64,000 bases of DNA, from positions 434,001 through 498,000 of the forward strand of contig JAHDYR010000064.1 of NCBI GenBank assembly GCA_019828565.1. Direction: 5' to 3'. The stretch comes from Carpediemonas membranifera BICM (lineage: Eukaryota > Protista > Fornicata). Below are positions 1,102 to 63,678 of the stretch, one piece after another (position 1 is the first letter of the stretch; each line of letters opens with the position of its first letter). The notes beneath the pieces are model-generated. The model did not search any database. It was not told the DNA's origin and worked only from the letters and a program-made list of their open reading frames with translations. The translations under genes were made by a program, and so were the position numbers.

Positions 1102-2100
1102 GGCTTCATAAAAATCGGTTTGACTGTTGTTGACTTGAGGTCGAGTCGTCCTGGCACACAGTGATAAGCCGTTACCTGACAAAAAAGTCGGGCGGCCAGA
1201 CTCCCTGACAGCGTTCATTTGACAACTTCAACATATCGGAGAGACCTCTGCACCGTGAGGTTGGGGTTAGAGAAGGCATTGCTAACAAAGGAGTGCAGCC
1301 AGCCTGTGAGTCAAACCACTGAGCCAAAATAGACCGGCATTCCACACCCAGACACATGTGTTGGAACCGTCATAAACCTCGTGTCCATTCTTATTTGGGC
1401 AAGCGATTGACCGGGTCGCCCCGATGATGTGACATGGTGGCATGTTTCGATTGATGAATCATCTCGGGTGAGTCGCGACTTAGAACCAAACATCGGCCGA
1501 ATTTGTCACTGATCCGCACGTCGTTCAGCCGGAGCATGATCGAACCGCGCACTGTAGAAGGCCGACCCACCTTGACGAGCTCACATCGCGCGCGGTTCAA
1601 AGTGAGATACAATGACCATTTATGGCGGGTTGAGCTCATGTAACATAACTAGTTGTAGTGGTATATGCGCAACACAACAGGCAATTTCTTCATTCTATAC
1701 CTGTCAGGGTCCCTCTGCTGGTGGTTGCTCGTAAATTTCAGTTCAAGTTCATGTCTCATGTCTTCACATAGCCACACTCACATGCACTTATCCACTTCCC
1801 AAACAAGCTATCAGCGTGTCTGCGGGCCTGCTGCCTGCTACAATGTGAGATTATGCTCAAGTTAGCCTGATGGCAGTCAACCCGACGCACACCTCAAAAG
1901 GCAATGGGTATTCAAAACAAAGAAACAAAAAGCGATTCTCACTATGGGCAACACGGTTGAATGGCACAGAAGTATCCATAGCTGCGCCAAAATGGTCCGA
2001 CTGGCCCTACTTCCAAAGTCACGGCATAGATGCAGGAAAAAAGGAAAAGCAAGAATTTTTTCGTTGAAAAAAAGTGCCTCTACGAGTGTGATCAGTGAAG

Positions 2101-5266: not shown

Positions 5267-5554
5267 AGTTTACTACGACCATAAACGCGCCGTTCTCGAA
5301 CACTTCTGCCTAATATCATCGACTCCCAACCAGTCCCAGTCTCGTCTGATGGATAGGTGCCAGTGAGTGTGGCTAGGTGTGTGAAGTGGACATGAGATAT
5401 GTTGAACTGGAAAATTTACGAGCAGCCACTATCAGAGAGACCCTGACAGGTATTGAAGGAAGGAAATGCATTCTGTGTTGTACATAAACAACGCCGTTCA
5501 TCTTTTGATTCTGTTGGCATCGCTGTGCATATTTCCCAAAGCCTAATTCTCAGG

Positions 5555-16277: not shown

Positions 16278-17153
16278 TTACATATCGGCGAAGAATGGGT
16301 GCTGCAGAGCTCTGCTGGCGCTGATACGCTCGGCCGGGTCGTAGGCCAGCAGCTTCTTCAGCAGGTCGACACCGTCGGCCCCGATCTTGGGCAGAAGGTG
16401 GTCGAACCCGCTAGGCTGGAAGCTGGGGAAGGTCTGCTTGAAGTCCGGCAGCTTCGACACGCCGGGCCAGGTTGCCTCGGTGGGGGTACCGAGGACCTGG
16501 AAGATCTGGAAGAGCTCGCCGATCTGGGAGTCCCCGGGGAAGAGGGGCTTGGACGTCGCCATCTCGGCCAGGATGGCTCCGACGGACCAGGTGTCGACGG
16601 ACGTGGTGTAGTGTTTGGACCCGAGCAGGATCTCGGGGGCGCGGTACCAGAGGGTGACGACCTCGTGGGTGTAGACGCGCATGGGGACGGAGAAGGCGCG
16701 GACAAGGCCGAAGTCGCCAACCTTGAGGGTGCCGTTGCACAGGAGCAAGTTTTGGGGCTTCAGATCGCGGTGAAGGAGACGAGTTGCGTGGCATGCATCA
16801 ACGCCGGATAGGAGCTCATAGGTGAAACGCTTGATTTCGCTGAGGGGGAGGCCTTCTGGATGCCCCTCCATGTGCTTCTTGAGGTCGAGGTCTCCGAGTT
16901 CGAAAATGAGGAAGAGTTTGCCTTCTTCGTTCACAACGTCGAGGAGAGCAACAACATTCTCATGCTGAATTGTCTTCAGGACACTGATTTCGCGAAGAGC
17001 AGTTGTAGGGATGCCTTCTTCGGGGTGAGGCGAGTTCGTCTGCTTCAAAGCTATCATACGGCCGGTCGTGAGGTCTTTCGCCTTCCAAACCTTTCCGTAC
17101 GCTCCTTCACCCACTTTTTCAATTGGTAGATAGCGAGAGGAGCTCGAAACCAT
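16278..17153 (-). CDS. Cyclin-dependent kinase, CDK1/2-like
   Basis: GEGAYGKV, EGIPTTALREIS (PSTAIRE variant), HRDLKPQN, YTHEVVTLWYRAPE and PLFPGDSQI. True ATG at 17153; the upstream ORF extension lies inside the Fanzor element. Confidence 0.93.
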   Translation of the reverse strand: MVSSSSRYLPIEKVGEGAYGKVWKAKDLTTGRMIALKQTNSPHPEEGIPTTALREISVLKTIQHENVVALLDVVNEEGKLFLIFELGDLDLKKHMEGHPEGLPLSEIKRFTYELLSGVDACHATRLLHRDLKPQNLLLCNGTLKVGDFGLVRAFSVPMRVYTHEVVTLWYRAPEILLGSKHYTTSVDTWSVGAILAEMATSKPLFPGDSQIGELFQIFQVLGTPTEATWPGVSKLPDFKQTFPSFQPSGFDHLLPKIGADGVDLLKKLLAYDPAERISASRALQHPFFADM

Positions 17154-17163
17154 GCTTTCTTTG
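17153..17163. repeat. Left copy of imperfect target-site duplication TGCTTTCTT(T)G; partner 21518-21527
   Basis: tgctttctttg versus tgctttcttg flank the composite A1+B insertion. Confidence 0.65.
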
Positions 17164-17164
17164 A

Positions 17165-17306
17165 TGTGCTGCGCAGGATTAGAATTGTTGAGTCCAAAAC
17201 ACACAGTGATCCAAGCAGCATCAGGATCGCAGTGTGGTTCATCATACTCTATCAATCGTGCGCTGCATATCACGCGCTGCAGCGCGTGCTTGCTCAACTT
17301 AGCAAG
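17165..17306 (-). ncRNA. Putative omegaRNA scaffold (3' tail of Fanzor A1; may extend into the ORF end)
   Basis: Lies between the Fanzor stop and the element end; hairpins at 17200-17236, 17271-17288 and 17289-17306; terminal 30 nt conserved in the divergent element B. Confidence 0.65.
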
Positions 17307-19212
17307 TTAATGATAGTGTGGAAGAGCACCTCTCTGGGAGTCGTAGTGGAAAGGAGATTGCTCTATCTGATCTGAAGTTGCATCGTAGGTGCACCAAAGG
17401 ATGTTCTCGCTGGCGCTCTTATCTCGGTGAGAGAGATTGAGAAGTATGTCTCTCTGCTCGGGATGCCGACGTAGCCGTTCAACGCGCCATGGAGCTCCCT
17501 CGCACGCGGGATTCTGGCAGAGCATGGTGCGGTATGCGTGCACCACACGTCTGAAGTGTGCTTTGCAGTATGGGCACACGATGGAAGTGCGGAATTCGGA
17601 GACCATCGTGACACTCACGACGACTTTGTGCCGGAGCATTATGCCAGGAAGTGCTCGAGCAAAGTGGCGGTACGGAGCACACGAGGGAGTGCCGGCAGAA
17701 CCGAACAGTGCAGCCCCATACGCGACTTTGAGGTGAATGGGCTCCGGGGGGCGCCCGCCGAGATCATCCAGGAGTTGACGTCCAGCCCGGGCGAAGTGCT
17801 TCAGGCGCATACAGTGATTGGCAAAAGTCGCACGGCGGAAACACTTTCTCGTCCCCTCGTTGATGATCTGAACGATGTTCTCATGGACAAACCTAATCGA
17901 CTGTTTGAGAGCCTCTAGACTTGTCGTTTTGAACGATGCTGCGCTCATATTCATGCGGAAAGAGAGGGTGGCAGTGTAGCCACACTTAGCGAGTACGCCA
18001 GATACACTCTGCCCGTCTGGGCGGCGGATCGTGTAGCCGCCCAGCGACCGAGCACCAGGGTCGAAGCCCATGAGAGCTTGAATGTCCGGGGCAGGAGTAG
18101 CCTCGGCGTCCTCCTGACCGAGCCGAGCCCGCTTGTTATTGCTACCCTTTTTGTACGTGAGCCGGTCAGCCACCCGACCGCCACGGTATTTCTCGCGACC
18201 CACCCAAACCTTCACAGCAACAGAGACCCCGTCAGTCTTCACAAAGAGCACTCTGCGGAGCTTGGTGCTGTCGCCGTGATCACGCTCGTATCTATCAACC
18301 TGCTCGTCGGTCAAGTTCTTGGTTGCTGACCAATTCACGTGCACACGGAGGCGCCTCTTCATCGCTGGGGTGAGCGCTGTTACTCCGCGCTCGATGGTCA
18401 TGAACCCAGGCCTGACCGGTGCCATCGGCACGAACGGGATGAGCTTCGGCTCTGGCAGGGCCTGACTGAGCTCGAGGTTCACGGCACGAGTGAGTGTGAC
18501 CAGCTTGGTCACTGCAGCACTCATGCGCGTGACGCACGACAGCACGCCGACAAGGGCCTCGGCCACGGTATCAGTGCGACCCACCCGTTGCCCCTCGGGC
18601 AATGCATGCATTTGACGATGATGCATGCCATGATCGGCGGATATTGCGGCTAACTCGGTGTCGAGCTCGCCTTGGGTGTCGAGAAAATCCTGTCGAACAC
18701 CCGGCCGATCATGGAGGAGCGGACGCACCCGTTCTAACCCAGCACGAAGACGGGTCAGGTACCCGGGTGACGCGCGCGAGAGCCAGACCCGGGTGGCTGT
18801 GGAGTACTCGCCCAACCAGGTGTCAAATGGCTTGCACAAGCCAAGGTAGCTATAAGCTGTGACGAAGTCCCGGACGAGTGGGGTTATGTCAGGGTCCCTC
18901 CACATCGCCAGGTCGCCAATCCACCTGCACCGATCCGCTGCCTTTGCCTTGGACACCTTTTTGCTGAGCAATGCTGACGATCTGCGCGAGGACTTCCTCG
19001 TCGAACAGGTTGACCGTCCTCGGTAGGGTCAACGCGTGCGCAGATGCAGAGACGCACGCAAGCAGGCAAGTGAATGTGTACTTAGCCTGCGTGAAAGAAC
19101 GCATGCCGGGTTCAAGATTTCCTCGCCGCGGCGCGTTGTTATCGCCTCCACCGTTAATCTCGCCAATGGCCTTGTTAACGGATGCCTTCACCGTGTATAT
19201 CTTGGAAGGCAT
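17307..19212 (-). pseudogene. Fanzor1 RNA-guided endonuclease (consensus 634 aa), +1 frameshift at ~18958-18962
   Basis: KTDGVSV motif, RuvC-I GFDPG (D 18060-62), YGAALF..AP, RuvC-II SEFRTS (E 17595-97), Zn finger CPYC..CQNPAC, RuvC-III HRDKSASENI (D 17421-23). T5 run here versus T4 in copy A2. Confidence 0.88.
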
Positions 19213-19579
19213 CGGAGTCTATTGAGCTGCCTGCATCGATCATTTCTTTTCAGGGTTCATCAGCTAGCAGCATCCCTCAAAACACAAGAAACCAGCATCA
19301 TACAACACAAAGCGTCTTTACTACCAGCTACAACCGCTTTCCACCACTAGTGTCTCTCACAACAGACGAAGATGACGAAGACGACGACGTCATGAGCTTC
19401 AGACGCCGGCAATGGACGACAGATGAGCGCGTAACAGACGAGCACAGACGCGAAAGAAGACAGCAGCGTTCGACACAGACGATGGACGACAGACGACGCA
19501 TCTTTTCGTGCAGACCGACGACTGAAAGCACGAAAGCCCGATGGTACAGACGAGGGCTGAAGTGGGTGAGTGGAGGTAG

Positions 19580-21517
19580 TGTGCCGCGTAGGATTAGAAT
19601 TGTTGAGTCTAAAGTCTAAAGCCTAAGTCACCTTTACATGAATCCTCCACATAAACCCTCTAAATACCACAACTGAAGTGTCATAGAGTGCACAGTGCAA
19701 GCACTGCGTCTCTCCACTTCAATTAGCTTGCCCGGAGGCGAAGACTAGCGGCTGGTTAGCCGTAGTTGGTGTATTGGGGTTATAGTTGGGAAGACGGGCT
19801 GGAGGTCTTGGATTTCTGAGAGCACTGGCTTGATACTGTGCATCCGTCATGAGGCCGCAATCCAAGATGTTCTGTGCAGCAGTCTTGTCTCTGTGGGAGA
19901 GATTGAGCCAAGTGGATGTAGTATGATCGGAATTGAGGCGTTGCTGTCTGTACCATGGAGCACCTTGACAATTCGGGTTGTGGCATCGTGCGCCTCGTGA
20001 AGCGAGTTCTACGGAACCTCGCGCGGCAGAAAGGGCAGACGAGTGAGGTTCGGAACTCGTTAGTCATCCGCACTTCAGCAGTGATGTTGAAGGCTCTCAT
20101 GATGTGTGCTAGTGATTTTGCAAAGCGACCATACGGCGCGCATGGATGCACCCGACGGGGCGTCTTGAATCTAGCGCTTCCGTAGAAGACAACCAGCCTG
20201 GTGGGGGCTGCCCGGGGAGGGGCAATACCGCGAGGGAGTCGCCGAGGAGTCCATCCTAGGGTGCGAGCAAGCTGCTCCCCAGCTCTGTGGAAGTGCTTTT
20301 GACGCAAGATGTGGTTCGTCAGGCGCACTCTGCGGAAGCTCTTGACCATCCCAGCGTCGAATATTTCCTGCTCGTGGAGGAGCACAAACCTAACCGAGTT
20401 TTGTAGACTATCTAGATTTGTACTTTTGAATGACGCAGGAGTCATATCGAACGCGAAGCTGGGGGTCTTGGTGTACCCACACTTCGGGACCACACCGGAG
20501 GTGATGCCATCTGGGTGGCGGATGAAGAATCCACCCAGAGCCCGAGCACCCGGGTCGAACCCATGAGGTGGGCATCGGGGTCTGGCGCGGGGCGAGCATC
20601 CGCGCCATCCACACCCAGACGCTCCCGAACCTTTCGCTTCCTCGTCGGGTTGCCACTGGCACGTCTGTTGACGTATGACAGAGCACCAACTTGGACCGTG
20701 AGGTCCACGGCGACCCCATCTGTCTTGACAGACAGCACCCGACGGATGTTCGGAGGAAGAGCCTCCAGCTGCTCTCGCGTCATGCGCTCAGTGGCGTGAT
20801 GCTCCGGGTCGACCCCAAGTTGGGCAAGCCAAGCCGGGTTCAGCACGTTGAGAGAACAGGGAACGTGCATGAACCCGGGGCGGACAGGAGCCATCGGGAC
20901 AAGCGGAACAAGCTTGGGGCCAGCCAGCGGCTTGTCACCCGGAAGAGGTGGATGGGCGGTGTTGAATGCCGCAACCATATCCGTGAGCTCTCCCAGAGCC
21001 GCGGAGATCCGCCAGACGCAGGGCAGCGTGAGTAGAACGCCCTCGTCGACTCGTCCCGGAGTTGAGATCTTTGCAAGGTGCTCATCAACGATCGCCTTGA
21101 CAGCGCGTTGTTCGGTGCGCAACCGGGTGATGTCGTCCCGGGGCACGTCTGGATCACGCTGAGTCAGGACAGTGTCGACCCGAGTGATGATCTTCGCCAG
21201 GCGCCAGCAGTAACCTTCAAGGGCCTTGACGAGCCACAGCTTGGTGCTCGTGGCATATTCGCCCAGCCACACGTCGAACTCGCGAGGGCACTGTAGACGA
21301 GCTGCCCTGAAGGCGGTGCAGAGGCGGATGATGAACTCGTCATGCCATAGTGGCATCTCGGCTATTGAGGTGACAGCCTGCCGAACTGCGGCGTATTTTG
21401 TCGCGCCCAGGAAGCGGTCGACGAGTGAGTCGGCGGCGAGGTTTTGGTACTCTCCACTTCGTCGGTAGGCGACGATAACGATGGCCTGGTGCAGAGCCTG
21501 GTCATGCACGGGTAAAC
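19580..21517 (-). mobile_element. Fanzor1 element family B, 5'-truncated, in tandem with A1
   Basis: 3' terminus tgtgccgcgtaggattagaattgttgagtc is 28/30 identical to family A; homologous protein lacking ~65 N-terminal aa and the left end. Confidence 0.85.
19719..21517 (-). pseudogene. Divergent Fanzor1 pseudogene with frameshifts at ~20560 and ~19985
   Basis: FDVWLGEYATSTKLWL, PLVPMAPVRPGFM, SVKTDGVAV, (G)FDPGARALGG, TNEFRTSLVCPFC, then in the shifted frame CHNPNCQGAPW...LNLSHRDKTAAQNI; stop at 19719-19721. Confidence 0.85.
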
Positions 21518-21524
21518 TGCTTTC

Positions 21525-21554
21525 TTGGTTTTCGCAGGATAGCCCGAAAACCAA
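21525..21554. promoter_or_regulatory. Perfect 10-bp inverted repeat (ttggttttcg-N10-cgaaaaccaa), probable CDK/IFT74 bidirectional promoter core
   Basis: In the reconstructed empty site CGAAAACCAA lies 6 nt (CDK) and 11 nt (IFT74) upstream of the two ATGs. Confidence 0.5.
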
Positions 21555-21565
21555 AATTGCCCCAA

Positions 21566-23194
21566 ATGTCGTTCGAACCAGTCCGTACGGCGAGAGTGAG
21601 GACTGGAATGAGGACTGGAGTTTCCCAAAGACCAGGAAGTGGCGCGTTTGTCAACCAATCTGCTGTGGGTTCTATTGTTAACGCAAACGTTAACATTGCG
21701 GCCCGTCCGCTCACTAAGCAGGGCCTTGGTGGCGTCAGAATGCAGACTGGGCAACGCCAGATGACTGCAGGCATAGAACAGGCGGAGGCGCGAAACAAGA
21801 TAACCGCTATGCAGAAGGAAATAAGTCGTCTTCGCGAGGAGACCGCTACATCAGTTAAGAAGAACCAGCAGCGCATGGTCCTCGAGAAGCGCAACAAGCA
21901 GACCGAGAGCGAGATCAGGAAGCTCAAGGATACAATTTATGATCTCTCTGAAATCCACTCCCGCCTGCAGAAGAACATCGGCTTTGACGACATCGTTTCT
22001 GAGACCGCAATGTGCAAGCGTCAGCTAGTGGAGCTCGAGCGCACCATTGAGGACGAGCAGCGCCAGTTGCGGGCGGAGGAGAGCGACGTCCGGGCGCTTG
22101 AAGCCGAGCTGCGTGCCCTCGAGGACGGGACCGGCCAAATGATCGCCGAGCTCGGTGTCGACAAGGTCCGCGAGTACGAGAGGATGGAGCAGGAGAACGC
22201 CGAGATGGACGCAGACGAGAAGGCCCTTCTTGCTCAGGTCGAGCAGGCCCAGGCCGCGCTCCAGCAAGCCCAGGGCGAGGCGGCCGCTGACCCTACCAGG
22301 GCTGCGTATGTGGCGGCCAAGAAGGAGCTCACCGCCCGCAAAGAGCAGCGCGCGAGGATCCTTGCCGAGATCGAGGCGATGGAGGCGACTCTCGTTGACC
22401 ATGGCGTGTCGGAGGCCGACCAGGTCATGTCTGACATACAAGCGACGAAGACGGAGGTCGCCGAGCTGCAGCAGGAGAACCAGGTCCTCGCTGCCGAGCT
22501 GGCCAAGAAGAAGGAGCTGCTGGCCAACGAGAGCGACATGACGCGCGAGGTGACGGAGGAGAACGAGCGGAAGCTCATCACTAAGGTCGCCGAGATGGAG
22601 AGCTTTATTGCCCGGTTCCCAGGGGCCGAGGCGAAGAAACAGGCCGCCATCGACGACGCCACCAATCAGATCGGCGATTTGATTAACCAGCTGGCGGCGT
22701 CCATCGCTCAGTCCGGGAACGGCGAGAGCGCCGAGGACCAACTCAAGGCCCGCACTGCTGAGCTCGAGAAGCTGCAGACATTGGAGCAGAAGGTGGCCGC
22801 CGAGACCGCCGCTCTAGACGACAAGCTGGTCGCGCTGGCCAAGGAGCGTGAGGAGCTGGAGGAGATGCTGCGTCTGCCCGCCGTGTCGGACAAGGATAGT
22901 CTCCGGCAGCTGTCGATCCACTACGCCGCCCGCAAGTCCGAGCTGACGCAGACGCTGTCCATCCGGGGAGCCGAGTACCGCCGCGTGCAGCAGGCCGTCG
23001 AGCGGAACCCCCGCATCGAGGAGCTCGCCGGTATGGAGCAGCGACTGCGGCATATTGAGCAGCAGCTCGCCCAGTCGGAGGAGTACTGCCGGTCTGCGAG
23101 GCGGGAGACGGATTACTCCGACCTCAAGGAGCAGTGCCTCGCCCTCGTCGGGCAAATCAACCAGCACCACATCCGGAATGCCAGGGCGATCTAG
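21566..23194 (+). CDS. IFT74: Intraflagellar transport protein 74
   Basis: Basic N-terminus 'RPGSG...AARPLTKQGLGGVR', long coiled coil, C-terminal 'RETDYSDLKEQCLALVGQIN'. Confidence 0.82.
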   Translation: MSFEPVRTARVRTGMRTGVSQRPGSGAFVNQSAVGSIVNANVNIAARPLTKQGLGGVRMQTGQRQMTAGIEQAEARNKITAMQKEISRLREETATSVKKNQQRMVLEKRNKQTESEIRKLKDTIYDLSEIHSRLQKNIGFDDIVSETAMCKRQLVELERTIEDEQRQLRAEESDVRALEAELRALEDGTGQMIAELGVDKVREYERMEQENAEMDADEKALLAQVEQAQAALQQAQGEAAADPTRAAYVAAKKELTARKEQRARILAEIEAMEATLVDHGVSEADQVMSDIQATKTEVAELQQENQVLAAELAKKKELLANESDMTREVTEENERKLITKVAEMESFIARFPGAEAKKQAAIDDATNQIGDLINQLAASIAQSGNGESAEDQLKARTAELEKLQTLEQKVAAETAALDDKLVALAKEREELEEMLRLPAVSDKDSLRQLSIHYAARKSELTQTLSIRGAEYRRVQQAVERNPRIEELAGMEQRLRHIEQQLAQSEEYCRSARRETDYSDLKEQCLALVGQINQHHIRNARAI

Positions 23195-38988: not shown

Positions 38989-41900
38989 TTAAACGTCCAA
39001 CTCCTTTGGTGCGTCCGACTTGAAGTAGTTGAGCATACGTCCAGTGATCAGGAAGCCGCCGGCGACGTTGACCATGGAGATAAAGATCGCGATGGCGCCG
39101 ACGACGACAGTCCACTCCTTATAGAAGGGGTGCTTATCGAGGAGCATCATGCCGCCGAGCACAACGATGCCAGAGATAGCATTGGTGACAGACATGAGGG
39201 GCGTGTGTAGCGAGGGGTGCACGTCGCCGATGATCTTGACGCCGATGAACACGGAGAGCGCGAAGATGAGCAGCACCGTCTGCATGGAGCCCGTGCCCTT
39301 GGGCGACTTGTACGGCACAAACATGGACAACAGCAGCGCGATGACGACCGCGGCGAACGGCAGGGCCCAGTAGAGGGTGAAGCGGGCCTGGGGGTTCATG
39401 GGAACCTTGCCGGCGACCTCCTCGACCTCGGGCTGGACAACCTCGGCGACCTTGCCGGCGGAGGGCGGGGGGCCGACGGGGCGCTTGGGCTCGGGCATGA
39501 CCTCACCGTTGTGTGTGAGTGTCATGGGGCCGATGACGTCATCCTCCATGGGGAGGACGAAGTCGGGGCGGATGACGTAGGCCTTGGGGGCGTCCTCGGG
39601 GGGGACGTACTCAGCGTCGCGCTGCTGGTCGGCGATCGTGTCGAGGATGTGGAACATGTTGGTGGCGTAGAGCTCAGAGGCGACGGCGGCCATGCGGGAA
39701 GCGAGGTCGGTGTAGCCGATGATGGTGACGCCGTTGTCGGTGACGTACTTCTCGCCGGGGCGGGTCAGCTCGCAGTTCCCACCGCCAGCAGCGGCGAGGT
39801 CGACGATGACGGCGCCGGGCTTCATGTCGGCGACCATGTAGTCCTTGATCATGATCGGGGACTTGCGGTTGGGGATGGCCGCGGTCGTGATGATGATGTC
39901 GATGCGCTTGCACTGCTTGTGGAAGAGCTCGTACTCCTTGCGGAGGAACTCCTCGGAGGCCGTCTGGGCGTACCCGCCGGCCCCAGCGCCGTCCTCATCC
40001 ATGTCGACCTCGAGGAACTCGGCGCCCATGGACTTGACCTCGTCCTTGACGACAGAGCGGATGTCGAAGGCACGGACGACAGCACCCATGGCGCGCATCG
40101 TGCCGATGGCAGACAGACCGGCGACACCAGCGCCGATGACGAGGACCTCGGCGGGCTCGGTCTTGCCGGCGGCCGTGATCTTGGGGGCGATGAGTGCGCG
40201 GTAGGAGTTGCAGGCCTCGATGCAAGCGCGGTAGCCGGCGAGGTTGGCGGTAGACGAGAGAGCGTCCATCTTCTGGGCGCGGGACGTCCGGGGGATGCGC
40301 TCCATGCACATGCAGTGGACGCCGTACTCCTCGGCGAGGAACTCGATCATGGCCTTGTTGTCGGCGTTGCCGGGGTTCATGAACGAGATCAGCATGGGCC
40401 CGACCTTCGTCGCGGTGTACACCTCAGCGCGGGCACCGGTGCGCCACTTGTTCTCGCCCATGACGAAGAGCTCGGCGGCCTCCTCGCGAGTGGGGAGGTT
40501 GACCTTGAGGACGACCTCGGCGTCGGCCGCGTCGGCGTGGGTCTGGACGATCTCGCCGCCTACGGCCTCGTAGAGGTGGTCGGGGAAGTTGGAGCCGACG
40601 CCGCAGCCCGTCTGGAGCTTGACGTGGAAGCCGATCTTGCGGAGGCGGGTGATGTTCTCGGGCGACATGGCGATACGGTCCTCGTCCTCGGCCAGCTCGC
40701 GGGGGATGTAGATGGTGGAGCGGGGCTCAGGGTAGACGTAGGTGTCCTCGGTCTCCTCCTCGTCGAGGTCCTCGGTGGTGTCCTCGGCCTTGGCCATGCC
40801 GGCCGTGAGCTTGGAGATGCCGTCGCGGAGGTCGTTGATGCACTTGGCAGCATCAGCGAAGAGCATGCGGGCGTTATCGTCGACGAAGATGGGGTTCGTG
40901 ACGCCGGCGTAACCCGGGGAGAGGGAGCGCTTGATGACAAAGACGGCCTTGGAGCGCCAGACCTCGACGACGGGCATGTTGATGTCCCGGTTGACTGTGT
41001 CGTTGGCGCCGATGATGATGGCGGCGTCGTACGACTCCATCTCGGGGTTGACCTCGTCCATGGTCTTGACGATGTTGTAGGGGCAGGCAGCCTCGGCCAG
41101 GAGGATGTTCATGTGGCCGGGGAGACGGCCGGCGACGGGGTGGATGCCGAAGGTGACGTTCACACCGACTGAGCGGAGGTTCTCGACGGCCTCCACAAGG
41201 GGGCGCTGGGCACGGGCGACGGCGAGGCCGTAGCCTGGGACGATGAGGATCTTCTTGCAGTTGACAAGGGTGGCGGAGAGGTCCTCGACGGCGATGGTCT
41301 TGCAGCGGGCCTTCTGGTCAGCAGCCTGAGCGCGCTTTTCCTCGGCAGAGAGGCCGCCGGACTGGACGCCGCCCTTGATGACCTCGAGCAGCGTGCGGTT
41401 CATGGCCACGCACATCAGCTGAGCGAGGATGGCACCAGACGAGCCGACTATGGAGCCGGTGATGATCATGAGGTAGCCGTCCTGGCGGAGCGTCAGGCCG
41501 GTGAGGGCGCCAGACCAACCCGAGCCGGAGTTCAGGATGGAGATGACGACGGGCATGTCAGCGCCACCGATGGCGAGGACGACAGCGGTGGAGAGTAGCG
41601 TGGAGACGATGACGACGGCGATGAGGATGGCGTAGGAGATGTACCAGTAGGGCTCGCCCGAGGGGATGAACAGGAAGGCAATGGCAAGGATGGCGTCGAT
41701 GATGCCCAGGCCGACGTTGATCGCGTTGCGGAAAGGCAGCGCGCGGGGCTGGCCAACGAGCCAGCGGGGCTTGCCCATGAGCTTGAGGCAGGCCCAGATC
41801 GAGCCGACAAACGTCATCGTGCCGATGAGGACACCGAGAACGATGGAGATGCGGGACAGGAGCAGATCGACAACATAGGTCATGTCTTCGAAGGCTTGGT

Positions 41901-42294
41901 CCTCGCGGACATCAAAGGCAAAGCCCTCAAGGACTGCGGCGAGGCCACCGAAAGAGTTGAGAAGGCCAACCATCTGGGGCATGCCGGTCATCTTCACAGA
42001 GGTCGCGATCACGACACCAACCGTCGAGCCGGCACCGGCGAGGATGAGGAAGATAACGATGTTGAACAACTTGGACCAGTATTCCGCGTTCACGTGGTAA
42101 ACGTTATAGAGAACTGCCAGGATAGCAATAAGCATACCAACAATGGCAAACATGTTACCACGGGCAGCAGTGGACTGCTTGCTGAGGCCAACGATGGCGA
42201 AGATGAACAGTGCTGCAGAGGGCACAAAGGAGAATGCGACAATATTGTCAGCACCATACTTCATGGTTTCATTCACCTGATCCCAGTCTACCAT
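38989..42294 (-). CDS. NAD(P) transhydrogenase, single-chain beta-alpha order
   Basis: Beta part first (MPQMVGLLNSFGGLAA, GGADMPVVISILNS, HPVAGRLPGHMN, GANDTVN), then alpha part (RAQKMDALSS, GAGVAGL, DLAAAGGGNC, LHTPLMSVTNAISG). Confidence 0.95.
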   Translation of the reverse strand: MVDWDQVNETMKYGADNIVAFSFVPSAALFIFAIVGLSKQSTAARGNMFAIVGMLIAILAVLYNVYHVNAEYWSKLFNIVIFLILAGAGSTVGVVIATSVKMTGMPQMVGLLNSFGGLAAVLEGFAFDVREDQAFEDMTYVVDLLLSRISIVLGVLIGTMTFVGSIWACLKLMGKPRWLVGQPRALPFRNAINVGLGIIDAILAIAFLFIPSGEPYWYISYAILIAVVIVSTLLSTAVVLAIGGADMPVVISILNSGSGWSGALTGLTLRQDGYLMIITGSIVGSSGAILAQLMCVAMNRTLLEVIKGGVQSGGLSAEEKRAQAADQKARCKTIAVEDLSATLVNCKKILIVPGYGLAVARAQRPLVEAVENLRSVGVNVTFGIHPVAGRLPGHMNILLAEAACPYNIVKTMDEVNPEMESYDAAIIIGANDTVNRDINMPVVEVWRSKAVFVIKRSLSPGYAGVTNPIFVDDNARMLFADAAKCINDLRDGISKLTAGMAKAEDTTEDLDEEETEDTYVYPEPRSTIYIPRELAEDEDRIAMSPENITRLRKIGFHVKLQTGCGVGSNFPDHLYEAVGGEIVQTHADAADAEVVLKVNLPTREEAAELFVMGENKWRTGARAEVYTATKVGPMLISFMNPGNADNKAMIEFLAEEYGVHCMCMERIPRTSRAQKMDALSSTANLAGYRACIEACNSYRALIAPKITAAGKTEPAEVLVIGAGVAGLSAIGTMRAMGAVVRAFDIRSVVKDEVKSMGAEFLEVDMDEDGAGAGGYAQTASEEFLRKEYELFHKQCKRIDIIITTAAIPNRKSPIMIKDYMVADMKPGAVIVDLAAAGGGNCELTRPGEKYVTDNGVTIIGYTDLASRMAAVASELYATNMFHILDTIADQQRDAEYVPPEDAPKAYVIRPDFVLPMEDDVIGPMTLTHNGEVMPEPKRPVGPPPSAGKVAEVVQPEVEEVAGKVPMNPQARFTLYWALPFAAVVIALLLSMFVPYKSPKGTGSMQTVLLIFALSVFIGVKIIGDVHPSLHTPLMSVTNAISGIVVLGGMMLLDKHPFYKEWTVVVGAIAIFISMVNVAGGFLITGRMLNYFKSDAPKELDV

Positions 42295-42946
42295 TCTTGT
42301 GTGGACGACAGACGGGTCTTGTGCTAGGTTCAGAATTTTTTCGCGCGCAGAATTCTTTGACGATTTTAGACTTCTGGAATCGAGCATGATCGGCGTGCAA
42401 CAGTGTTCAAATGAGTTATGCTGGCGTTTCACTTGGTTCTGGAGGGCTTCATGTCATTGTATCTCGAGATATGACTGCAATAGATCCAGATCGAAAAATA
42501 AACGCGGGCTGACAACTACCAGTGGCTAGAAAGATCGGCGCTGTGTCGGTACGGCGTTGTTTTGGCGATTATGGCGCCGGTTTGGCTTGCGGCGCAGTCT
42601 GGCGAACTCAGTTCGGACAACTGGAAGGAACATCAAGATGGCATTGTATTCCTTTGATTCATCCTCTTCGTTGCAAGCAAGCCGTGAAGCTGTTATTTTG
42701 AACCAGAAAGGACGAAAACGAGCAAAAACGAGCCAGAAAGATGACAAAATGATCGCATCTCCAGGATTGCCCCTTTCAAGCATCAGTTGGCTCCAATACC
42801 ACCTTCAACTGGCTTCAGTTGTCGGGACTCATGCTGGTTTCGCTGTGTTTGAACAGATCTCTGGGGCTGCCCGGAGATCTTTGCAAATCGCAACACATCG
42901 CGACCACAGGGGACTTCATATCTGCGATAAATATAAACCGGTCAGC

Positions 42947-54084: not shown

Positions 54085-56024
54085 CTAATGACAGTCAGCG
54101 TACAGTGCTGCGATCTCATCCTCAAAATACTCGCCTAGCTTGTTACGCCGCAGCTTGAATGTGGCCGTGAGCAGCTCGTTGCTGGGGTCGAACAGCTCGG
54201 ACGTCAGATGGAACGCCGCGATGCGCATGAACGAGGGCAGCTTCTCCTCGGCGCGGTACTTGTCGAAGTCCTCGGTCAGGCGGGCGACGAGGCGGGGGTC
54301 CTGGCCGTCCACGATCTTGGCAGCCTCCTCGGTGGCGCAGCCGAGCATCTCGACGACGGTGGGCAGATCGACCGAGATGACGGCGACGAGCTTGCTCTCA
54401 TCCGAGGACCCGTGGACCCACATCTGGTCGACGAGTGCGGCGTTGCCGTAGATGGCCTCGAGGTTCTCGGGGGAGACGTACTCGCCCTGTGAGAGCTTGA
54501 AGATGTTCTTCTTACGGTCCACGATAGAGACCTTCTTGCCGTCCACGAAGCGGGCAATGTCGCCCGTCGCGAACCAGCCCTCCTCGTCGAAGGCGCGCCT
54601 CGTTTCCTCGTCGTTGTGGTAGTACTCGCCGAAGACGGCCGGGCCACGGAGCATGATCTCCCCGGCATTGCCGCCCTCGTAGCCCATCTCGGGGACGGGG
54701 GCCAGCTTGAGCTCCATGTTAGGCACGGCCGGGCCGACGTTGGTGACGGACGTGTCGCCGACGTGTTGCACGCAGCAGGCGGCGACGCACTCAGTGAGGC
54801 CATAGCCCTGGATGAAGTGGGCCGAGAAGGCGGCCGACATGAACTCCTGGACCTTCTCGGACAGGGGCGCGCCGCCCGAGATGAAGAGCTGAAGGTTGTT
54901 GCCGAAACCTGCGCGGAACTCCTCAAATATCTTGTCGAACACGGAGAGGATAGCGCCAGTGCGGCGCATGCGGGCCATCTTGTACTTGAGGGCGAGCTTG
55001 AAGATAGATTGCTTGAGCATGCTCTCGGCGCCGACCTTCTTCATGACGCCGTCGAAGATTCGCGTGTAGACGCGGGGCACGCCGACGAAGACGTTTGGCC
55101 GAGCCAAAGCGAGGTCGGAGAGGATGTTGTCGAGGCTGCCGCTGTAGAAGCAGACCGTGCCCGTCACGTAGATGCCGACGGCGAAGATGGCCCGCTCCAG
55201 GACGTGGGCGAGGGGCAGGTAGCTGAAGTAGACGGCATTCTCGTTGAGCTGGGGGATGCCGTGGGTGTAATAGCCCACCGCTGAGGCGATGAAGTTCGAG
55301 TGGGTCAGAACGACGCCCTTGGGGACGCCAGTGGTGCCGGACGTGTAGATGATGGAGGCGACGTCCGAGGGCTTGGGCGGGTTGGGCGGGGTGATGTCAG
55401 TGACGCTATTGATGGCTTCATACAGGAATGACACCGCGACGCCCCTGTCCTCGAGGGAGGCCAGTGCCGCGAGGAGGTTGGTGTCGAGGGTCGCGCGGTC
55501 CTGGATGACAATGAGGTGCTTCACAACGATGTCATCTGGCATTCCAGTATCCATTGTCAGTGCGTCTATGGTCGTATGAGCCCTGTCAGCGCTGCACACC
55601 ACGGCTGAGACGGCGGCGTGGGCGAGAATGAAGTTGATCTCCCGGGCCGTGAGGGAGTCGTAGAAGGGCACTGTGATGATGCTGCTGCGGTTGGCCGCCT
55701 GCTCGGCGAGCACCCATCTGTGTAAGGGCGGCGTTGTCAGGCGTACTCGGGTGCGTTCGGGGAGAAGATACTGAGGCGGTCTCCAGCCTGCAGTCCAAAA
55801 GAAGAAAAGACGGTTGACAGCTTTTTGATCTGCTTTCTGACGTCTTTCATTCCTCTAAAAACAAAATCACCGAGAGAGCCATCTGGGAGGGTCTCTCGGC
55901 ATCCACAGAAGGGCCTGTCGTAGTATCGGCGTGAAGCTGATTGCCAATTCTCCCAAAGCGTAGTGATTCGTATCTGTGGGTCCTCAAGGTCCACTAAATG
56001 CGGTAGTTCCGGTTCAGGCGCCAT
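54085..56024 (-). CDS. Long-chain acyl-CoA synthetase; intron 55718-55746
   Basis: IIYTSGTTGVPKG, SYLPLAH, QGYGLTE, GWFATGD and DRKKNIFKLSQGEYVSPE. Confidence 0.93.
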
Positions 56025-59278: not shown

Positions 59279-60793
59279 TTAAAACTCGGCGCGGATGACC
59301 TCCATGGCCTCCTCAAACACCATCCGCATCGCCTCGGTCACGTCCGGCCGCCCCTTGAGCCCGACGACCTCGACAGACACGCCACGGGGCAGGGCATCGA
59401 CTACAATGCCCTCACCGTTGCCCGCGAGTACAAACGGGATCAGCTCAACCTCGCCCTCGGTCGCTGGGAACTCCTCGAGGACTGCGGCGACGTGCTTGTC
59501 GCACAGCTGCCGGCCGTCGAGCTCGGTGTCGATCGCCATCGTGCTGGGCTCCAGCGGGATCTGCCCGCTGACGCCGACGACGCGGTTGCCCTCGATGGTC
59601 TCCCAGTCTGCCGCCTGGGAGTACGGCCCTATACAGGCGGGCGCCCACGACGAGACCGACTCAACGTGGAGTCGCCGCTGGGACGCCCCCGGGATGGGGA
59701 GGATCGCAACGGTGTGGCGGCCGTCCTTCGAGTTCATCTGGACACAGCACCGGCCGGGCGGCGGCATGGCCGTGAACGTTGCTGAGTAAACGCCGTTGAT
59801 GGGGCCGAACTGGCCGAGGTCGCTGACGGCCATGATGTTGTACATGGGGTCCTTCGTCGCCTGGTGGGCTGCGAGCAGCGTCTCCCGTGCCACAGTCAGG
59901 ATGTCCTCACCGGTACCTATGAAGAGGTTGAAGCCACGCACGTCGTGTATGGTGACTGTTGCCAGGGACGAGTCGCCGTCGGTCGGGGGCACGAGCAGCT
60001 GTGGGCGGCCGGTGAGCACAGCATGGCGCCGCTCAATGGCCTCAAACTGGACATCCTCGAGGGCCACGTCGAAAGCGAGGTGACCAACGGGCGCCATGTC
60101 ATCGTCGTCCGTCACCACCACTCGGCGGTTGACCACTGACAGCCGCTGGTGGAACAGACCGGGGCAGTACAGCGTGATGGACTCGAACTCGCCGCCCTCG
60201 CCGGCCTCGTTGACCTGGTAGCGCTGGGCCAGGTCGTTCAGGTGGGCGCGGGCCTGGACGATGCTCAGGCCGCAGTGTTTGCGGGGGTCGAGGCCCATGG
60301 ACGCCGTCTTGACGATGATGGCCTCCATCCCTGCCTCCTCCATCATGTCTAGCAGGGTAGCCTGTGCTATACGCCACAGGGGCGCGAGGGAGAGCAGCCC
60401 GTGGGTGCGACAGACGTGTTCCACCCGGATCCGCTGGTAGTGCGAGAACACAGCGCCTGTGGATAGCCCTTTGATGTCAGTGTGGGCGGCAAGGACGTCT
60501 GCAACGAGCATGGAGAGTGTCTCGATCTCGTCGCCCTCCGTCGTCTCGTACTGGAGCCCGACACTCTTCGAATCACCGCGGGAAATTGTGCGGCGGAATA
60601 GCGGGAGGTTCATAGCCTTGGCGATGCTATCAATCACGTTGTGGCCAACAGTCTGGAACGTGAAGGAGTCAATCTCGTCTTCGGCGACGGGCGCAAGGTT
60701 CGCTAGAGCGACACACTCGTGACCCTGCTTCACAAGCTGGTGAATGGCGAAGATAGAGTCTTTTCCACCGCTGATCAGAGCAAGAAACTTCAT
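59279..60793 (-). CDS. DPH6: Diphthine-ammonia ligase with C-terminal RidA/YjgF-like domains
   Basis: MKFLALISGGKDS, DSFTFQTVGH, YQRIRVEHVC, AGEGGEFES, LHVESVSSWAPACIGPYSQA. Confidence 0.92.
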   Translation of the reverse strand: MKFLALISGGKDSIFAIHQLVKQGHECVALANLAPVAEDEIDSFTFQTVGHNVIDSIAKAMNLPLFRRTISRGDSKSVGLQYETTEGDEIETLSMLVADVLAAHTDIKGLSTGAVFSHYQRIRVEHVCRTHGLLSLAPLWRIAQATLLDMMEEAGMEAIIVKTASMGLDPRKHCGLSIVQARAHLNDLAQRYQVNEAGEGGEFESITLYCPGLFHQRLSVVNRRVVVTDDDDMAPVGHLAFDVALEDVQFEAIERRHAVLTGRPQLLVPPTDGDSSLATVTIHDVRGFNLFIGTGEDILTVARETLLAAHQATKDPMYNIMAVSDLGQFGPINGVYSATFTAMPPPGRCCVQMNSKDGRHTVAILPIPGASQRRLHVESVSSWAPACIGPYSQAADWETIEGNRVVGVSGQIPLEPSTMAIDTELDGRQLCDKHVAAVLEEFPATEGEVELIPFVLAGNGEGIVVDALPRGVSVEVVGLKGRPDVTEAMRMVFEEAMEVIRAEF

Positions 60794-60803
60794 TTGACAC
60801 CTC

Positions 60804-60814
60804 GTCTTCTCGTA
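60804..60814. repeat. Target-site duplication GTCTTCTCGTA, left copy
   Basis: Exact 11-mer repeated at 63225-63235 on the other side of element A2. Confidence 0.9.
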
Positions 60815-60956
60815 TGTGCTGCGCAGGATTAGAATTGTTGAGTCCAAAACAGACAGTGATCCAAGCAGCATCAGGATCGCAGTGTGGTTCATCATACTCT
60901 ATCAATCGTGCGCTGCATATCACGCGCTGCAGCGCGTGCTTGCTCAACTTAGCAAG
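60815..60956 (-). ncRNA. Putative omegaRNA scaffold of Fanzor A2
   Basis: Same structured 3' tail as 17165-17306 (one substitution seen). Confidence 0.65.
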
Positions 60957-62864
60957 TTAATGATAGTGTGGAAGAGCACCTCTCTGGGAGTCGTAGTGGA
61001 AAGGAGATTGCTCTATCTGATCTGAAGTTGCATCGTAGGTGCACCAAAGGATGTTCTCGCTGGCGCTCTTATCTCGGTGAGAGAGATTGAGAAGTATCTC
61101 TCTCTGCTCGGGATGCCGACGTAGCCGTTCAACGCGCCATGGAGCTCCCTCGCACGCGGGATTCTGGCAGAGCATGGTGCGGTATGTGTGCACCACACGT
61201 CTGAAGTGTGCTTTGCAGTATGGGCACACGATGGAAGTGCGGAATTCGGAGACCATCGTGACACTCACGACGACGTTGTGCCGGAGCATTATGCCAGGAA
61301 GTGCTCGAGCAAAGTGGCGGTACGGAGCACACGAGGGAGTGCCGGCGGAACCGAACAGTGCAGCCCCATACGCGACTTCGAGGTGAATGGGCTCCGGGGG
61401 GCGCCCGCCGAGATCATCCAGGAGTTGACGTCCAGCCCGGGCGAAGTGCTTCAGGCGCATACAGTGATTGGCAAAAGTCGCACGGCGGAAACACTTTCTC
61501 GTCCCCTCGTTGATGATCTGAACGATGTTCTCATGGACAAACCTAATCGACTGTTTGAGAGCCTCTAGACTTGTCGTTTTGAACGATGCTGCGCTCATAT
61601 TCATGCGGAAAGAGAGGGTGGCAGTGTAGCCACACTTAGCGAGTACGCCAGATACACTCTGCCCGTCTGGGCGGCGGATCGTGTAGCCGCCCAGCGACCG
61701 AGCACCAGGGTCGAAGCCCATGAGAGCTTATTGAATGTCCGGGGCAGGAGTAGCCTCGGCGTCCTCCTGACCGAGCCGAGCCCGCTTGTTATTGCTACCC
61801 TTTTTGTACGTGGGCCGGTCAGCCACCCGACCGCCACGATATTTCTCGCGACCCACCCAAACCGTCACAGCAACAGAGACCCCGTCAGTCTTCACAAAGA
61901 GCACTCTGCGGAGCTTGGTGATGTCGCCGTGATCACGCTCGTATCTATCAACCTGCTCGTCGGTCAAGTTCTTGGTTGCTGACCAATTCACGTGCACACG
62001 GAGGCGCCTCTTCATCGCTGGGGTGAGCGCTGTTACTCCGCGCTCGAGGGTCATGAACCCAGGCCTGACCGGTGCCATCGGCACGAACGGAACGAGCTTC
62101 GGCTCTGGCAGGGCCTGACTGAGCTCGAGGTTCACGGCACGAGTGAGTGTGACCAGCTTGGTCACTGCAGCACTCATGCGCGTGACGCACGACAGCACGC
62201 CGACGAGGGCCTCGGCCACGGTACCAGTGCGACCCACCCGTTGCCCCTCGGGCAATGCATGCATTTGACGATGATGCATGCCATGATCGGCGGATATTGC
62301 GGCTAACTCGGTGTCGAGCTCGCCTTGGGTGTCGAGAAAATCCTGTCGAACACCCGGCCGATCATGGAGGAGCGGACGCACCCGTTCTAACCCAGCACGA
62401 AGACGGGTCAGGTACCCGGGTGACGCGCGCGAGAGCCAGACCCGGGTGGCTGTGGAGTACTCGCCCAACCAGGTGTCAAATGGCTTGCACAAGCCAATGT
62501 AGCTATAAGCCGTGACGAAGTCCTGGACGAGTGGGGTTATGTCAGGGTCCCTCCACATCGCCAGGTCGCCAATCCACCTGCACCGATCCGCTGCCTTTGC
62601 CTTGGACACCTTTTGCTGAGCAATGCTGACGATCTGCGCGAGGACTTCCTCGTCGAACAGGTTGACCGTCCTCGGTAGGGTCAACGCGTGCGCAGATGCA
62701 GAGACGCACGCAAGCAGGCAAGTGAATGTGTACTTAGCCTGCGTGAAAGAACGCATGCCGGGTTCAAGATTTCCTCGCCGCGGCGCGTTGTTATCGCCTC
62801 CACCGTTAATCTCGCCAATGGCCTTGTTAACGGATGCCTTCACCGTGTATATCTTGGAAGGCAT
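60957..62864 (-). pseudogene. Fanzor1 endonuclease with in-frame TAA insertion (61728-61730) splitting 378-aa and 254-aa parts
   Basis: CAA-TAA-GCT-CTC-ATG-GGC-TTC-GAC here versus CAA-GCT-CTC-ATG in A1; all RuvC and Zn-finger motifs otherwise intact. Confidence 0.88.
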
Positions 62865-63224
62865 CGGAGTCTATTGAGCTGCCTGCATCGATCATTTCTT
62901 TTCAGGGTTCATCAGCTGGCAGCATCCCTCAAAACACAAGAAACCAGCATCATACAACACAAAGCGTCTTTACTACTAGTTACAACCGTTTTCCACCACT
63001 AGTATCTCTCACAACAGACGAAGATGACGAAGACGACGACGACATGAGCTTCAGACGCCGGCAATGGACGACAGATGAGCGCGTAACAGACGAGCACAGA
63101 CGCGAAAGAAGTCAGCAGCGTTCGACACAGACGATGGACGACGCATCTTTTCGTGCAGACCGACGACTGAAAGCACGAAAGCCCGATGGTACAGACGAGG
63201 GCTGAAGTGGGTGAGTGGAGGTGT

Positions 63225-63235
63225 GTCTTCTCGTA
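63225..63235. repeat. Target-site duplication GTCTTCTCGTA, right copy
   Basis: Matches 60804-60814. Confidence 0.9.
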
Positions 63236-63678
63236 GTGACCATAAAATGCACCCCTCTGAAAATGGCGGGCTCCTCGTCACGCTATCTGCCAGTCGCCGA
63301 GTCGCTGGGACATCCACCGGCTCAAATTCGACATCGCCGTTGCACTCGCTGAGGGTAACTGCCGGGTCTACAACGCCTCCACGGGGGCGACTGACCCCTC
63401 CTTCAAACCCTCCTCGACTTGAAGAGATTGCCGGGCGCGGTGTTCAGTGGCGAGATGCAGTGCGAGTGTGTGAGAGTTTGCAGGTGTGAGAAGTGAGTCA
63501 CGGACCCCGGTGCGTTGCTGATTGGCTCGACTTTGGCGAGGCTGATTCATCGAGACGAGAACAAGGCTCAGGGTGATGGTTATAAACAACAAAGCTCTGA
63601 ATATACTCGAGTAATAACGCTACATCTTCCTTCTGACATAGACTGCCAGACATTTAAGGGAATTTAAGATGGCATCGC

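What the first reader, a model, noticed from the sequence alone, without database searches (positions are those of the whole stretch)
17165..19577. A recently mobile, stand-alone Fanzor1 (eukaryotic RNA-guided nuclease) family with a reconstructable 634-aa protein
Seen: two ~2.41 kb copies 43 kb apart, differing by only scattered substitutions and small indels. Each encodes a protein with TDGVSV, RuvC-I DPG, RuvC-II EFRTS, a CxxC..CxxxxC Zn finger and RuvC-III RDxxAxxNI. Known: this motif set, size and the TDG motif mark the TnpB-derived Fanzor1 OMEGA nucleases. Inference: the D-E-D triad is intact and the lesions differ between copies, so merging A1 and A2 gives a full-length candidate programmable nuclease. 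Whether this lineage has been described cannot be checked here.
Basis: partly seen in the sequence, partly recalled or inferred. Interest (0 to 1): 0.95.

Follow-up and report, generated by a model that had tools for sequence, protein, structure and literature searches.

The report
Fanzor nuclease riding a retrotransposon-like vehicle
These are two broken copies of a many-copy jumping element of the free-living protist Carpediemonas membranifera; it carries a very divergent RNA-guided DNA-cutting (Fanzor) gene between ends borrowed from Ty3/Gypsy retrotransposons and lands in host promoters, a carrier type that a 2026 review says has no known example.

Summary
Observation confirmed: A1 and A2 are 98.5% identical, all motifs are present, and the lesions differ (A1 one extra T, A2 an in-frame TAA). 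No merge is needed: a natural uninterrupted 634-aa copy exists elsewhere in the genome (P0060/L004). The protein is Fanzor1-like by motif spacing, ESM Atlas and weak Foldseek hits, but has no sequence relative outside C. membranifera; no tree and no activity test were possible. A1 spans 17165-19671 and has Gypsy-type signals: TG..CA ends, a 34-bp direct repeat, a purine tract, 5-bp target duplications in five other copies, and end sequences shared with autonomous Gypsy elements. It inserts 6-8 bp from a host promoter motif, as two Gypsies do. A diverged, truncated Fanzor (B, 19674-21517) abuts A1. Best reading: a non-autonomous, Gypsy-dependent element with an antisense Fanzor cargo. The two repeats are unequal and not identical, so canonical LTR replication is not shown; no TAM is visible; RNA is not shown. 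The scan noted the same system on other DNA of this genome (not independent support).

The parts
17165..19671 (.). Element A1, whole (TG..CA ends), 2507 bp
   Evidence: Alignment of right ends of seven copies and TSD search; contigs break away at 19671
17165..17205 (+). A1 left terminal repeat, 41 bp (first 34 bp repeated at 19580); also the 3' end of the predicted omegaRNA scaffold on the minus strand
   Evidence: fold
17204..17211 (+). CA|GTGATC, same 8 letters as the junction between 5' LTR and palindromic primer-position site of Gypsy L010b
17165..17306 (-). Predicted omegaRNA scaffold behind the Fanzor stop codon (folds with z -3.0; no compensatory changes among 8 close copies)
   Evidence: no Rfam match
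17150..17164 (-). Predicted 15-nt guide from the host flank, overlapping the CDK start codon (inferred from the known Fanzor layout)
17307..19212 (-). A1 Fanzor ORF, broken by one extra T in the run 18958-18962; catalytic D384, E539, D597 and four Cys intact
19559..19579 (+). Purine tract ending GGTAG directly before the right repeat, as in three Gypsy elements of this genome
19580..19671 (+). A1 right terminal repeat, 92 bp; its last 11 nt are the reverse complement of the first 11 nt of the Gypsy L010a LTR and its last 8 nt equal the end of the Gypsy L010b LTR
19614..19665 (+). Short piece of a REL-type non-LTR element tail inside the right repeat (0-414 nt in other copies)
19684..19692 (+). 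Target-motif match for A1 (3 mismatches, offset 7), lying inside B's terminal repeat
19674..21517 (-). Element B: diverged Fanzor family (38-48% aa to A), 5'-truncated, two frameshifts (near 19982 and 20557), own terminal repeat 19674-19703
21518..21526 (+). 9-bp duplication of 17153-17161 at B's truncated end
21533..21541 (+). Host promoter-motif match in the B-type orientation, 6 bp from the duplication
60815..63224 (.). Element A2; right repeat lost except TGT(G)
60957..62864 (-). A2 Fanzor ORF, interrupted by an in-frame TAA at 61728-61730
60804..60814 (+). Left copy of A2's 11-bp duplication (right copy 63225-63235)
   Evidence: D12
63243..63251 (+). Target-motif match for A2 (2 mismatches, offset 7)
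16278..17153 (-). Host CDK-type kinase gene; ATG 11 bp from A1's end
59279..60793 (-). Host diphthamide synthase (DPH6-like) gene; ATG 21 bp from A2's end

Best explanation
A is a non-autonomous element that is copied and inserted by the machinery of co-resident Ty3/Gypsy retrotransposons and carries a Fanzor1-like RNA-guided nuclease gene antisense to its LTR-type signals. Shown: TG..CA ends, purine tract, direct repeat, 5-bp TSD, end sequences and target rule shared with autonomous Gypsies, insertion 6-8 bp from a host promoter motif, intact triad, moderate purifying selection, a folding 3' tail. Inferred: a Gypsy integrase, probably tethered by the factor that binds the promoter motif, does the insertion; the copy probably passes through RNA, with template jumps that would explain the variable right end; the host motif, which ends up upstream of the Fanzor ORF, drives its transcription; the run-through RNA gives an omegaRNA whose guide is the host flank. 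The most likely job of the nuclease (about 45%) is homing: cutting the empty allele in a zygote so that repair copies the element, in a haploid, probably sexual host without NHEJ (PMC8516963).
For: Exact 5-bp TSD directly at the element ends in L003, L004, L005, L006 and in held-out L011; B and C families also have 5-bp TSDs and TG..CA ends. Three complete Gypsies with identical LTR pairs (92, 96, 53 bp) have purine tracts ending GGTAG|TG like A; each Fanzor family's right end matches a different Gypsy LTR end: A 8 nt with L010b (plus the following GTGATC) and 11 nt with L010a's other end, B 9 nt with L010a, C about 35 nt with L009. Motif at offset 6-8 in 7 of 8 A sites with up to 2 mismatches (background 0.6%) and in both held-out loci; two Gypsies follow the same rule. 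The motif is a host upstream motif: 13 hits in 70 element-free upstream regions vs 1.06 expected, maximum 4 in 300 shuffles. Solo B repeats with TSD-like flanks. No transposase ORF inside A. dN/dS about 0.56, 0.42 for shared variants; triad and Zn finger kept across A, B, C at 44-51% identity.
Against: Left (41 bp) and right (38 to over 400 bp) repeats are unequal; they differ at position 31 in every copy and by linked changes in L003, L004, L009, which canonical LTR copying should not allow. No Gypsy with A's full LTR was found among the few fetched. The right repeat holds a non-LTR element tail. A1, A2, L001 and L012 have clipped ends or 3, 8, 11 or no bp duplications. No conserved TAM next to the guide-matching flank. 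RNA not shown. AlphaFold models are poor (pLDDT 43 and 34). The target motif was first read from these same insertions; only two loci were held out.
Confidence: 0.68

Rival explanations
1. The ends are Gypsy-derived and a Gypsy-type integrase inserts the element, but it moves as DNA (excised or copied without reverse transcription), like Ginger or Polinton integrase elements. The Fanzor would then restore excision sites.
For: Left and right repeats are not homogenised; internally deleted derivatives keep both ends (joints, L004 C copy, L010 A remnant); restorative homing suits elements that excise (PMC13565253).
Against: No terminal inverted repeats; the purine tract is kept in all three families; the same linked variants occur at both ends in different copies, which needs exchange between ends; no dedicated integrase-only helper seen.
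Confidence: 0.13
2. A is SINE-like: a site-specific REL-type non-LTR element recognises its own 3' tail in A's right end, or jumps template onto A RNA, and inserts A by target-primed reverse transcription; the endonuclease sets the motif and the 5-bp duplication.
For: Variably 5'-truncated non-LTR tail, always joined behind the same six letters with 1-4 extra letters, in 8 of 10 A right ends; related relics at window 55966-56170 and in L009.
Against: B, C and two Gypsies lack that tail yet show the same TSD length and target motif; A ends in an 11-nt Gypsy end sequence outside the tail; the far (left) end is never truncated in ten copies, unlike TPRT products; the two tail relics outside A show no motif at offset 7.
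Confidence: 0.08
3. One reading: an ordinary TIR-less DNA-transposon-type Fanzor1 element (Helitron, Crypton, Replitron or unknown helper); the LTR-like features are incidental.
For: TIR-less Fanzor1 elements and variable TSDs are described (PMC3627910); helitron-like and Rep genes exist in this genome (PMC8516963); A2 alone shows an 11-bp duplication.
Against: Fixed 5-bp TSDs, purine tract, TG..CA and sequence identity with Gypsy ends in three separate families.
Confidence: 0.06
4. The Fanzor itself chooses or opens the insertion site (the motif being its TAM), so the element is self-targeting and self-inserting.
For: The motif ends in an AT-rich TTTA 7 bp upstream of the duplication in Fanzor sense; Fanzor1 TAMs are AT-rich (PMC10432273).
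Against: Known Fanzor1 cuts lie 14-21 nt from the TAM, not 7-12; no fixed guide matches the varied sites; B sits on the other side of the same motif; Gypsies without Fanzor use the same sites; the motif is common upstream of host genes.
Confidence: 0.05

Closest known systems
Fanzor1 nucleases SpuFz1, GtFz1, PpFz1 (PMC10432273, PMC11423790)
   Same: About 630 aa, D-E-D triad with the Glu six residues before a C4 zinc finger, structured 3' tail running to the element end, top Foldseek matches.
   Different: 11-14% identity, no HMM-detectable kinship; carried between LTR-type ends, not TIRs; no TAM visible at the empty site; activity untested.
Giant-virus Fanzor-like clusters (Cas12f1-like TNB + DUF8286; Hyperionvirus, Homavirus, nudivirus 'transposases')
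   Same: Nearest by language-model features (0.98) and predicted structure (TM 0.59-0.64).
   Different: No alignable sequence similarity; the window copies sit among host genes, not in a viral region.
Non-autonomous LTR retrotransposons (TRIM, LARD, Cassandra, retrozymes; from my knowledge and titles)
   Same: Short terminal repeats, purine tract, 5-bp TSD, no gag-pol, solo repeats, helper lineages present.
   Different: Repeats unequal and not identical; no tRNA primer site; the cargo is a full nuclease gene in antisense whose RNA scaffold includes the left repeat.
Promoter-targeted Ty3/Tf1-type integration (from my knowledge)
   Same: Insertion at a fixed distance from a host promoter element in a gene-dense genome.
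   Different: The host motif and its binding factor are unidentified; families differ in which side of the motif they use.
Helitron2/Replitron-associated Fanzor elements of Chlamydomonas (PMC3627910, PMC10288648)
   Same: TIR-less, sometimes variable duplications and fuzzy right ends.
   Different: No HUH enzyme or terminal hairpin/ATIR link seen here; the default TSD is exactly 5 bp.

Membership tests
Fanzor/TnpB | D-X(125-275)-[TS][TS]-XX-C4 zinc finger-X(5-50)-RD (PMC3627910) | tested here: met
   D384, TS 542-543, C546/549/565/570, RD 596-597
Fanzor/TnpB | Rearranged RuvC-II: catalytic Glu six residues before the zinc finger (PMC13565253, PMC10530073) | tested here: met
   E539 then C546; invariant in A, B, C
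Fanzor/TnpB | Profile match to TnpB/Cas12f families | tested here: inconclusive
   Pfam Cas12f1-like_TNB in 17 of 35 members, best E 0.016, below cut-off; nothing in NCBIfam or PDB sequences
Fanzor1 | WED-REC-RuvC-TNB fold closest to Fz1 structures | tested here: inconclusive
   Foldseek top 5 SpuFz/GtFz, E 3.7e-4 to 3.6e-3, TM only 0.2 with a pLDDT 43 model; Atlas TM 0.59-0.64 to viral Fanzor-like models; C-terminal model too poor. Points to Fz1, not proof
Fanzor1 | Falls in the Fanzor1 clade of a TnpB/Fanzor tree | not testable with these tools
   No tool returned a non-Carpediemonas Fanzor sequence
Fanzor1 | Structured omegaRNA from the 3' end, bound by the protein | tested here: inconclusive
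   Tails fold with z -3.0 (A), -3.5 (B), -4.7 (C); no compensatory pairs among close copies; binding and expression not testable
Fanzor1 | TAM matching the sequence 5' of the empty site; guide-dependent cleavage | tested here: inconclusive
   No shared letters next to the guide-matching flank in nine rebuilt empty sites; cleavage not testable
Non-autonomous LTR retrotransposon | TG..CA ends and 4-6 bp TSD | tested here: met
   5-bp TSD in 5 A copies plus B and C copies; 4-5 other copies have aberrant ends
Non-autonomous LTR retrotransposon | Polypurine tract directly before the 3' repeat | tested here: met
   19559-19579, same last letters as Gypsy tracts
Non-autonomous LTR retrotransposon | Two full-length, near-identical LTRs per copy | tested here: not met
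   Only 34 bp shared; fixed and linked differences within copies
Non-autonomous LTR retrotransposon | Primer-binding site behind the 5' LTR | tested here: inconclusive
   No tRNA-type site; A keeps 8 of the 12 letters of the palindrome that Gypsy L010b has there; B and C have none
Non-autonomous LTR retrotransposon | Autonomous helper with shared cis signals | tested here: met
   Three gag-pol Gypsies sharing end sequences, tract and (two of them) target rule; sharing with A is only 8-11 nt
Non-autonomous LTR retrotransposon | Movement through an RNA intermediate | not testable with these tools
   Needs a reporter or particle cDNA
TIR DNA transposon (Mariner, hAT, MuDR, Ginger) | Terminal inverted repeats | tested here: not met
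   only TG..CA
Helitron/Replitron/IS607-type | No fixed-length TSD; HUH or serine recombinase partner | tested here: not met
   Fixed 5-bp TSD; no such ORF in the element

The most novel reading that the evidence does not exclude
An active RNA-guided Fanzor nuclease has been captured three times over, or once and diversified, by LTR-retrotransposon vehicles that replicate by a non-canonical, tRNA-free route using a helper's strong-stop DNA. Every new insertion in a promoter creates a new guide against that host gene's start, and the nuclease drives the insertion through sexual crosses with little or no TAM requirement: a retrotransposon-borne homing drive.
Probability: 0.25. Interest if true: 0.92.

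Novelty: new variant of a known kind. Interest (0 to 1): 0.76.

Why it matters
[quoted passage not shown] Three long-diverged Fanzor families kept with intact catalytic sites between Gypsy-type ends test that argument directly: either these elements excise, or Fanzors can pay their way by homing into empty alleles. The proteins are also a deep, so far unannotated branch (deposited as 'hypothetical' or 'cytosine deaminase') with natural intact copies ready for an ordinary RNP and TAM assay, and the lack of a shared TAM at the empty sites makes a relaxed TAM worth testing.

Tried and rejected
Non-standard genetic code reading A2's TAA as sense: rejected, host genes end in TAA, TAG and TGA. A1's extra T as an assembly error: undecided; contigs show only the frame-intact form, but they merge many copies and drop rare variants; the assembly used R9.4 nanopore plus Illumina. 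The 34-bp repeat at 19580 as B's conserved end: rejected, it is A's own right repeat in all copies and B starts at 19674. MuDR-like 11-bp TSD as the family rule: rejected, it is peculiar to the clipped copy A2. Replitron or Helitron carrier: no support. A fixed guide inside the left repeat aimed at LTRs: considered; folding places the repeat inside the scaffold in all three families, not excluded experimentally. End-to-end joining of unprocessed cDNAs at the A/Gypsy and A1/B junctions: equally explained by successive insertions at one hot spot. Searches for relatives outside Carpediemonas found none; Pfam, NCBIfam, PDB sequence and Rfam searches were blank or below cut-off; VIA-align matched only the helical bundle; the C-terminal model was unusable. 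The bacterial genome collection was not scanned. Broken ORFs were searched as separate pieces; the joined A2/A1 reading was used only inside one local script as a length ruler and sent to no search tool.

Full report
1. Observation. The window is compact, nearly intron-free eukaryotic DNA (57-60% GC). All hits of the Fanzor-like protein are Carpediemonas membranifera proteins, and the window's own A1 and B products are in that set (P0067, P0075), so the source is this free-living metamonad. The only long repeat in the window is A1/A2: 98.5% over 2422 columns, 43,650 bp apart, with 25 substitutions and three small indels. A1 has one extra T (run 18958-18962), A2 an in-frame TAA before RuvC-I; host genes use all three stop codons, so TAA is a stop. 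A natural copy with an uninterrupted 634-aa frame exists (P0060, locus L004, 96-97% DNA identity), so nothing has to be reconstructed. Of eight A copies examined in detail only that one is intact.

2. The protein. It fits the Fanzor/TnpB pattern of Bao and Jurka and has the rearranged RuvC-II glutamate six residues before the zinc finger; D384, E539, D597 and four cysteines are kept in nearly all copies and across three families A, B, C at 44-51% identity. Sequence searches see nothing outside this genome: phmmer over 1.84 billion representatives gave 29 hits, all of these families; profile searches, PDB, NCBIfam, viral and metagenome contigs were blank; Pfam gives only a sub-threshold TNB match. 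ESM Atlas places A and C next to giant-virus TNB/DUF8286 clusters (0.98; TM up to 0.64). A poor AlphaFold model (pLDDT 43.5) still ranks SpuFz and GtFz first in the PDB and giant-virus proteins first in BFVD. So: works like a Fanzor1 (about 85%); clade membership by tree untested. Variation among eight A copies gives dN/dS 0.56 after matching transition and transversion classes, 0.42 for shared changes: moderate purifying selection while the family spread.

3. The real element. Comparing ten other loci shows that A starts with a 41-bp TG..CA unit, whose first 34 bp recur at the right end behind a purine tract, and ends in a CA at window 19671 (contigs leave the sequence there). Exact 5-bp duplications flank L003, L004, L005, L006 and the held-out L011; B (L007) and C (L004) copies have the same plan and 5-bp duplications, and solo B repeats occur. 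Copies with a clipped right end (A2, L001, L012, window B) have 8-11 bp duplications or none, as expected if one end is joined by integrase and the other by repair (inference from my knowledge of one-ended retroviral integration). There are no inverted repeats and no transposase frame. The Fanzor gene lies antisense to these signals.

4. Helpers. Next to two Fanzor copies lie complete Ty3/Gypsy elements (gag zinc knuckle, RT, RNase H, integrase) with identical LTR pairs of 92, 96 and 53 bp. Their purine tracts end like A's. Family C shares the last 35 nt of the L009 LTR, B the last 9 nt of L010a, A the last 8 nt of L010b together with the six letters that follow the 5' LTR, and A's last 11 nt are the reverse complement of L010a's first 11. 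These Gypsies have a palindrome where a tRNA primer site would be. No Gypsy with A's whole LTR was seen, but only four Gypsies were fetched.

5. Target. Seven of eight A sites have a match (up to 2 mismatches) to TAAACTGCG 6-8 bp beyond the right duplication, against 0.6% by chance; both held-out loci have it at 7 bp; B sites show the reverse complement at 6 bp; Gypsy L009 follows the A rule and Gypsy L010a the B rule. The motif is a host upstream element: 13 hits in 70 element-free upstream regions, mostly 14-48 bp before the ATG, against 1.06 expected. In the window A1 ends 11 bp before the CDK start codon and A2 21 bp before the DPH6-like start. A1 itself used the motif copy inside B's terminal repeat.

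6. The RNA. The 142-nt tail behind the stop folds better than shuffles (z -3.0; B -3.5; C -4.7) and the fold includes the left repeat up to the last bases, so by the known Fanzor layout the guide is the host flank. Close copies give no compensatory changes, Rfam nothing. Rebuilt empty sites share no letters next to the guide-matching flank: no TAM is visible. Public runs are contigs only and their RNA status is a guess; they show frame-intact variants for both A1's and B's lesions and internally deleted derivatives that keep both ends, but not expression.

7. What does not fit. Left and right repeats are unequal and differ within copies; canonical LTR copying would make them identical. Eight of ten right repeats hold a variably 5'-truncated tail of a REL-type non-LTR element (motif reading from my knowledge; Pfam blank), joined at one fixed point. 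This is either repeated site-specific insertion into the repeat or a trace of template jumps during reverse transcription. I therefore say 'works like a non-autonomous LTR element', not 'is a TRIM'.

8. Mechanism and odds. Gypsy-dependent vehicle, probably through RNA, 0.68; Gypsy-type integrase on a DNA intermediate 0.13; SINE-like movement by the non-LTR element 0.08; ordinary TIR-less DNA element 0.06; Fanzor-directed insertion 0.05. For the nuclease's role, homing into empty alleles is the best guess (about 45%): the host is predicted haploid, probably sexual and lacks NHEJ (PMC8516963); the missing TAM counts against it.

9. Novelty. Fanzors are known from many DNA transposons; the 2026 review by its text finds no evidence for retrotransposons encoding one, and I found no paper naming Carpediemonas Fanzors (supplements not searched). 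New variant of a known kind. Other readers and follow-up agents of this scan reached similar readings on other pieces of this genome; the LTR idea came to me from those notes and was then tested here; they are not independent support.

Noticed in passing
window 19659-19673 (minus strand): B's predicted guide is the right end of A1, and it matches other A right ends with one mismatch (L003, L005): a B-type RNA from this locus would point at family A copies genome-wide.
   Followed up: partly
window 55966-56170: Relic of a REL-type non-LTR element C-terminus and tail, 41% aa to the piece captured in A's right repeat.
   Followed up: partly
L009:4785-9430 (reverse), L010:7883-16737 and nested L010:11648-16173: Compact Gypsy elements with identical 92, 96 and 53 bp LTRs, gag start 10-20 bp behind the 5' LTR and a perfect palindrome instead of a tRNA primer site; some carry frameshifts.
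   Followed up: partly
L010:5097-16737 and L009: Stacks of A remnant, B and Gypsy at one site, each separated by a copy of the same 5-bp target: promoter sites act as repeated insertion hot spots.
   Followed up: partly
L004:230-5845: Gypsy pol region in a 4070-bp tandem unit with an inverted 1546-bp-repeat piece.
   Followed up: no
L006:5643-8144: Unannotated telomerase reverse transcriptase gene (Telomerase_RBD + RVT_1).
   Followed up: no
L006:18912-21898: Non-LTR element with RT, CCHC and REL-like C-terminus ending close to an apparent tRNA gene.
   Followed up: no
window 17154-17164 plus 21527-21565: Removing A1 and B leaves only about 50 bp between the divergent start codons of the CDK gene and a coiled-coil gene at 21566-23194 (resembles IFT74 from memory; Pfam blank).
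   Followed up: partly
window 17172-17181 and 19587-19596: The terminal repeats of A (and of B and C) contain near-copies of the host promoter motif, which could supply a replacement promoter to the interrupted host gene.
   Followed up: no
window 19330-19560: Low-complexity GAC/CAGAC-rich 5' region of A; several deletion derivatives in the contigs join here.
   Followed up: no
P0230: A protein annotated as Cdc73 carries an 82%-identical Fanzor piece, probably a gene model running into an insertion; P0001 is mis-named cytosine deaminase.
   Followed up: no
window 1658-1794 and 5350-5492: Short 79% inverted repeat pair.
   Followed up: no
window 38989-42432: Single-chain NAD(P) transhydrogenase in beta-alpha order.
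   Followed up: no
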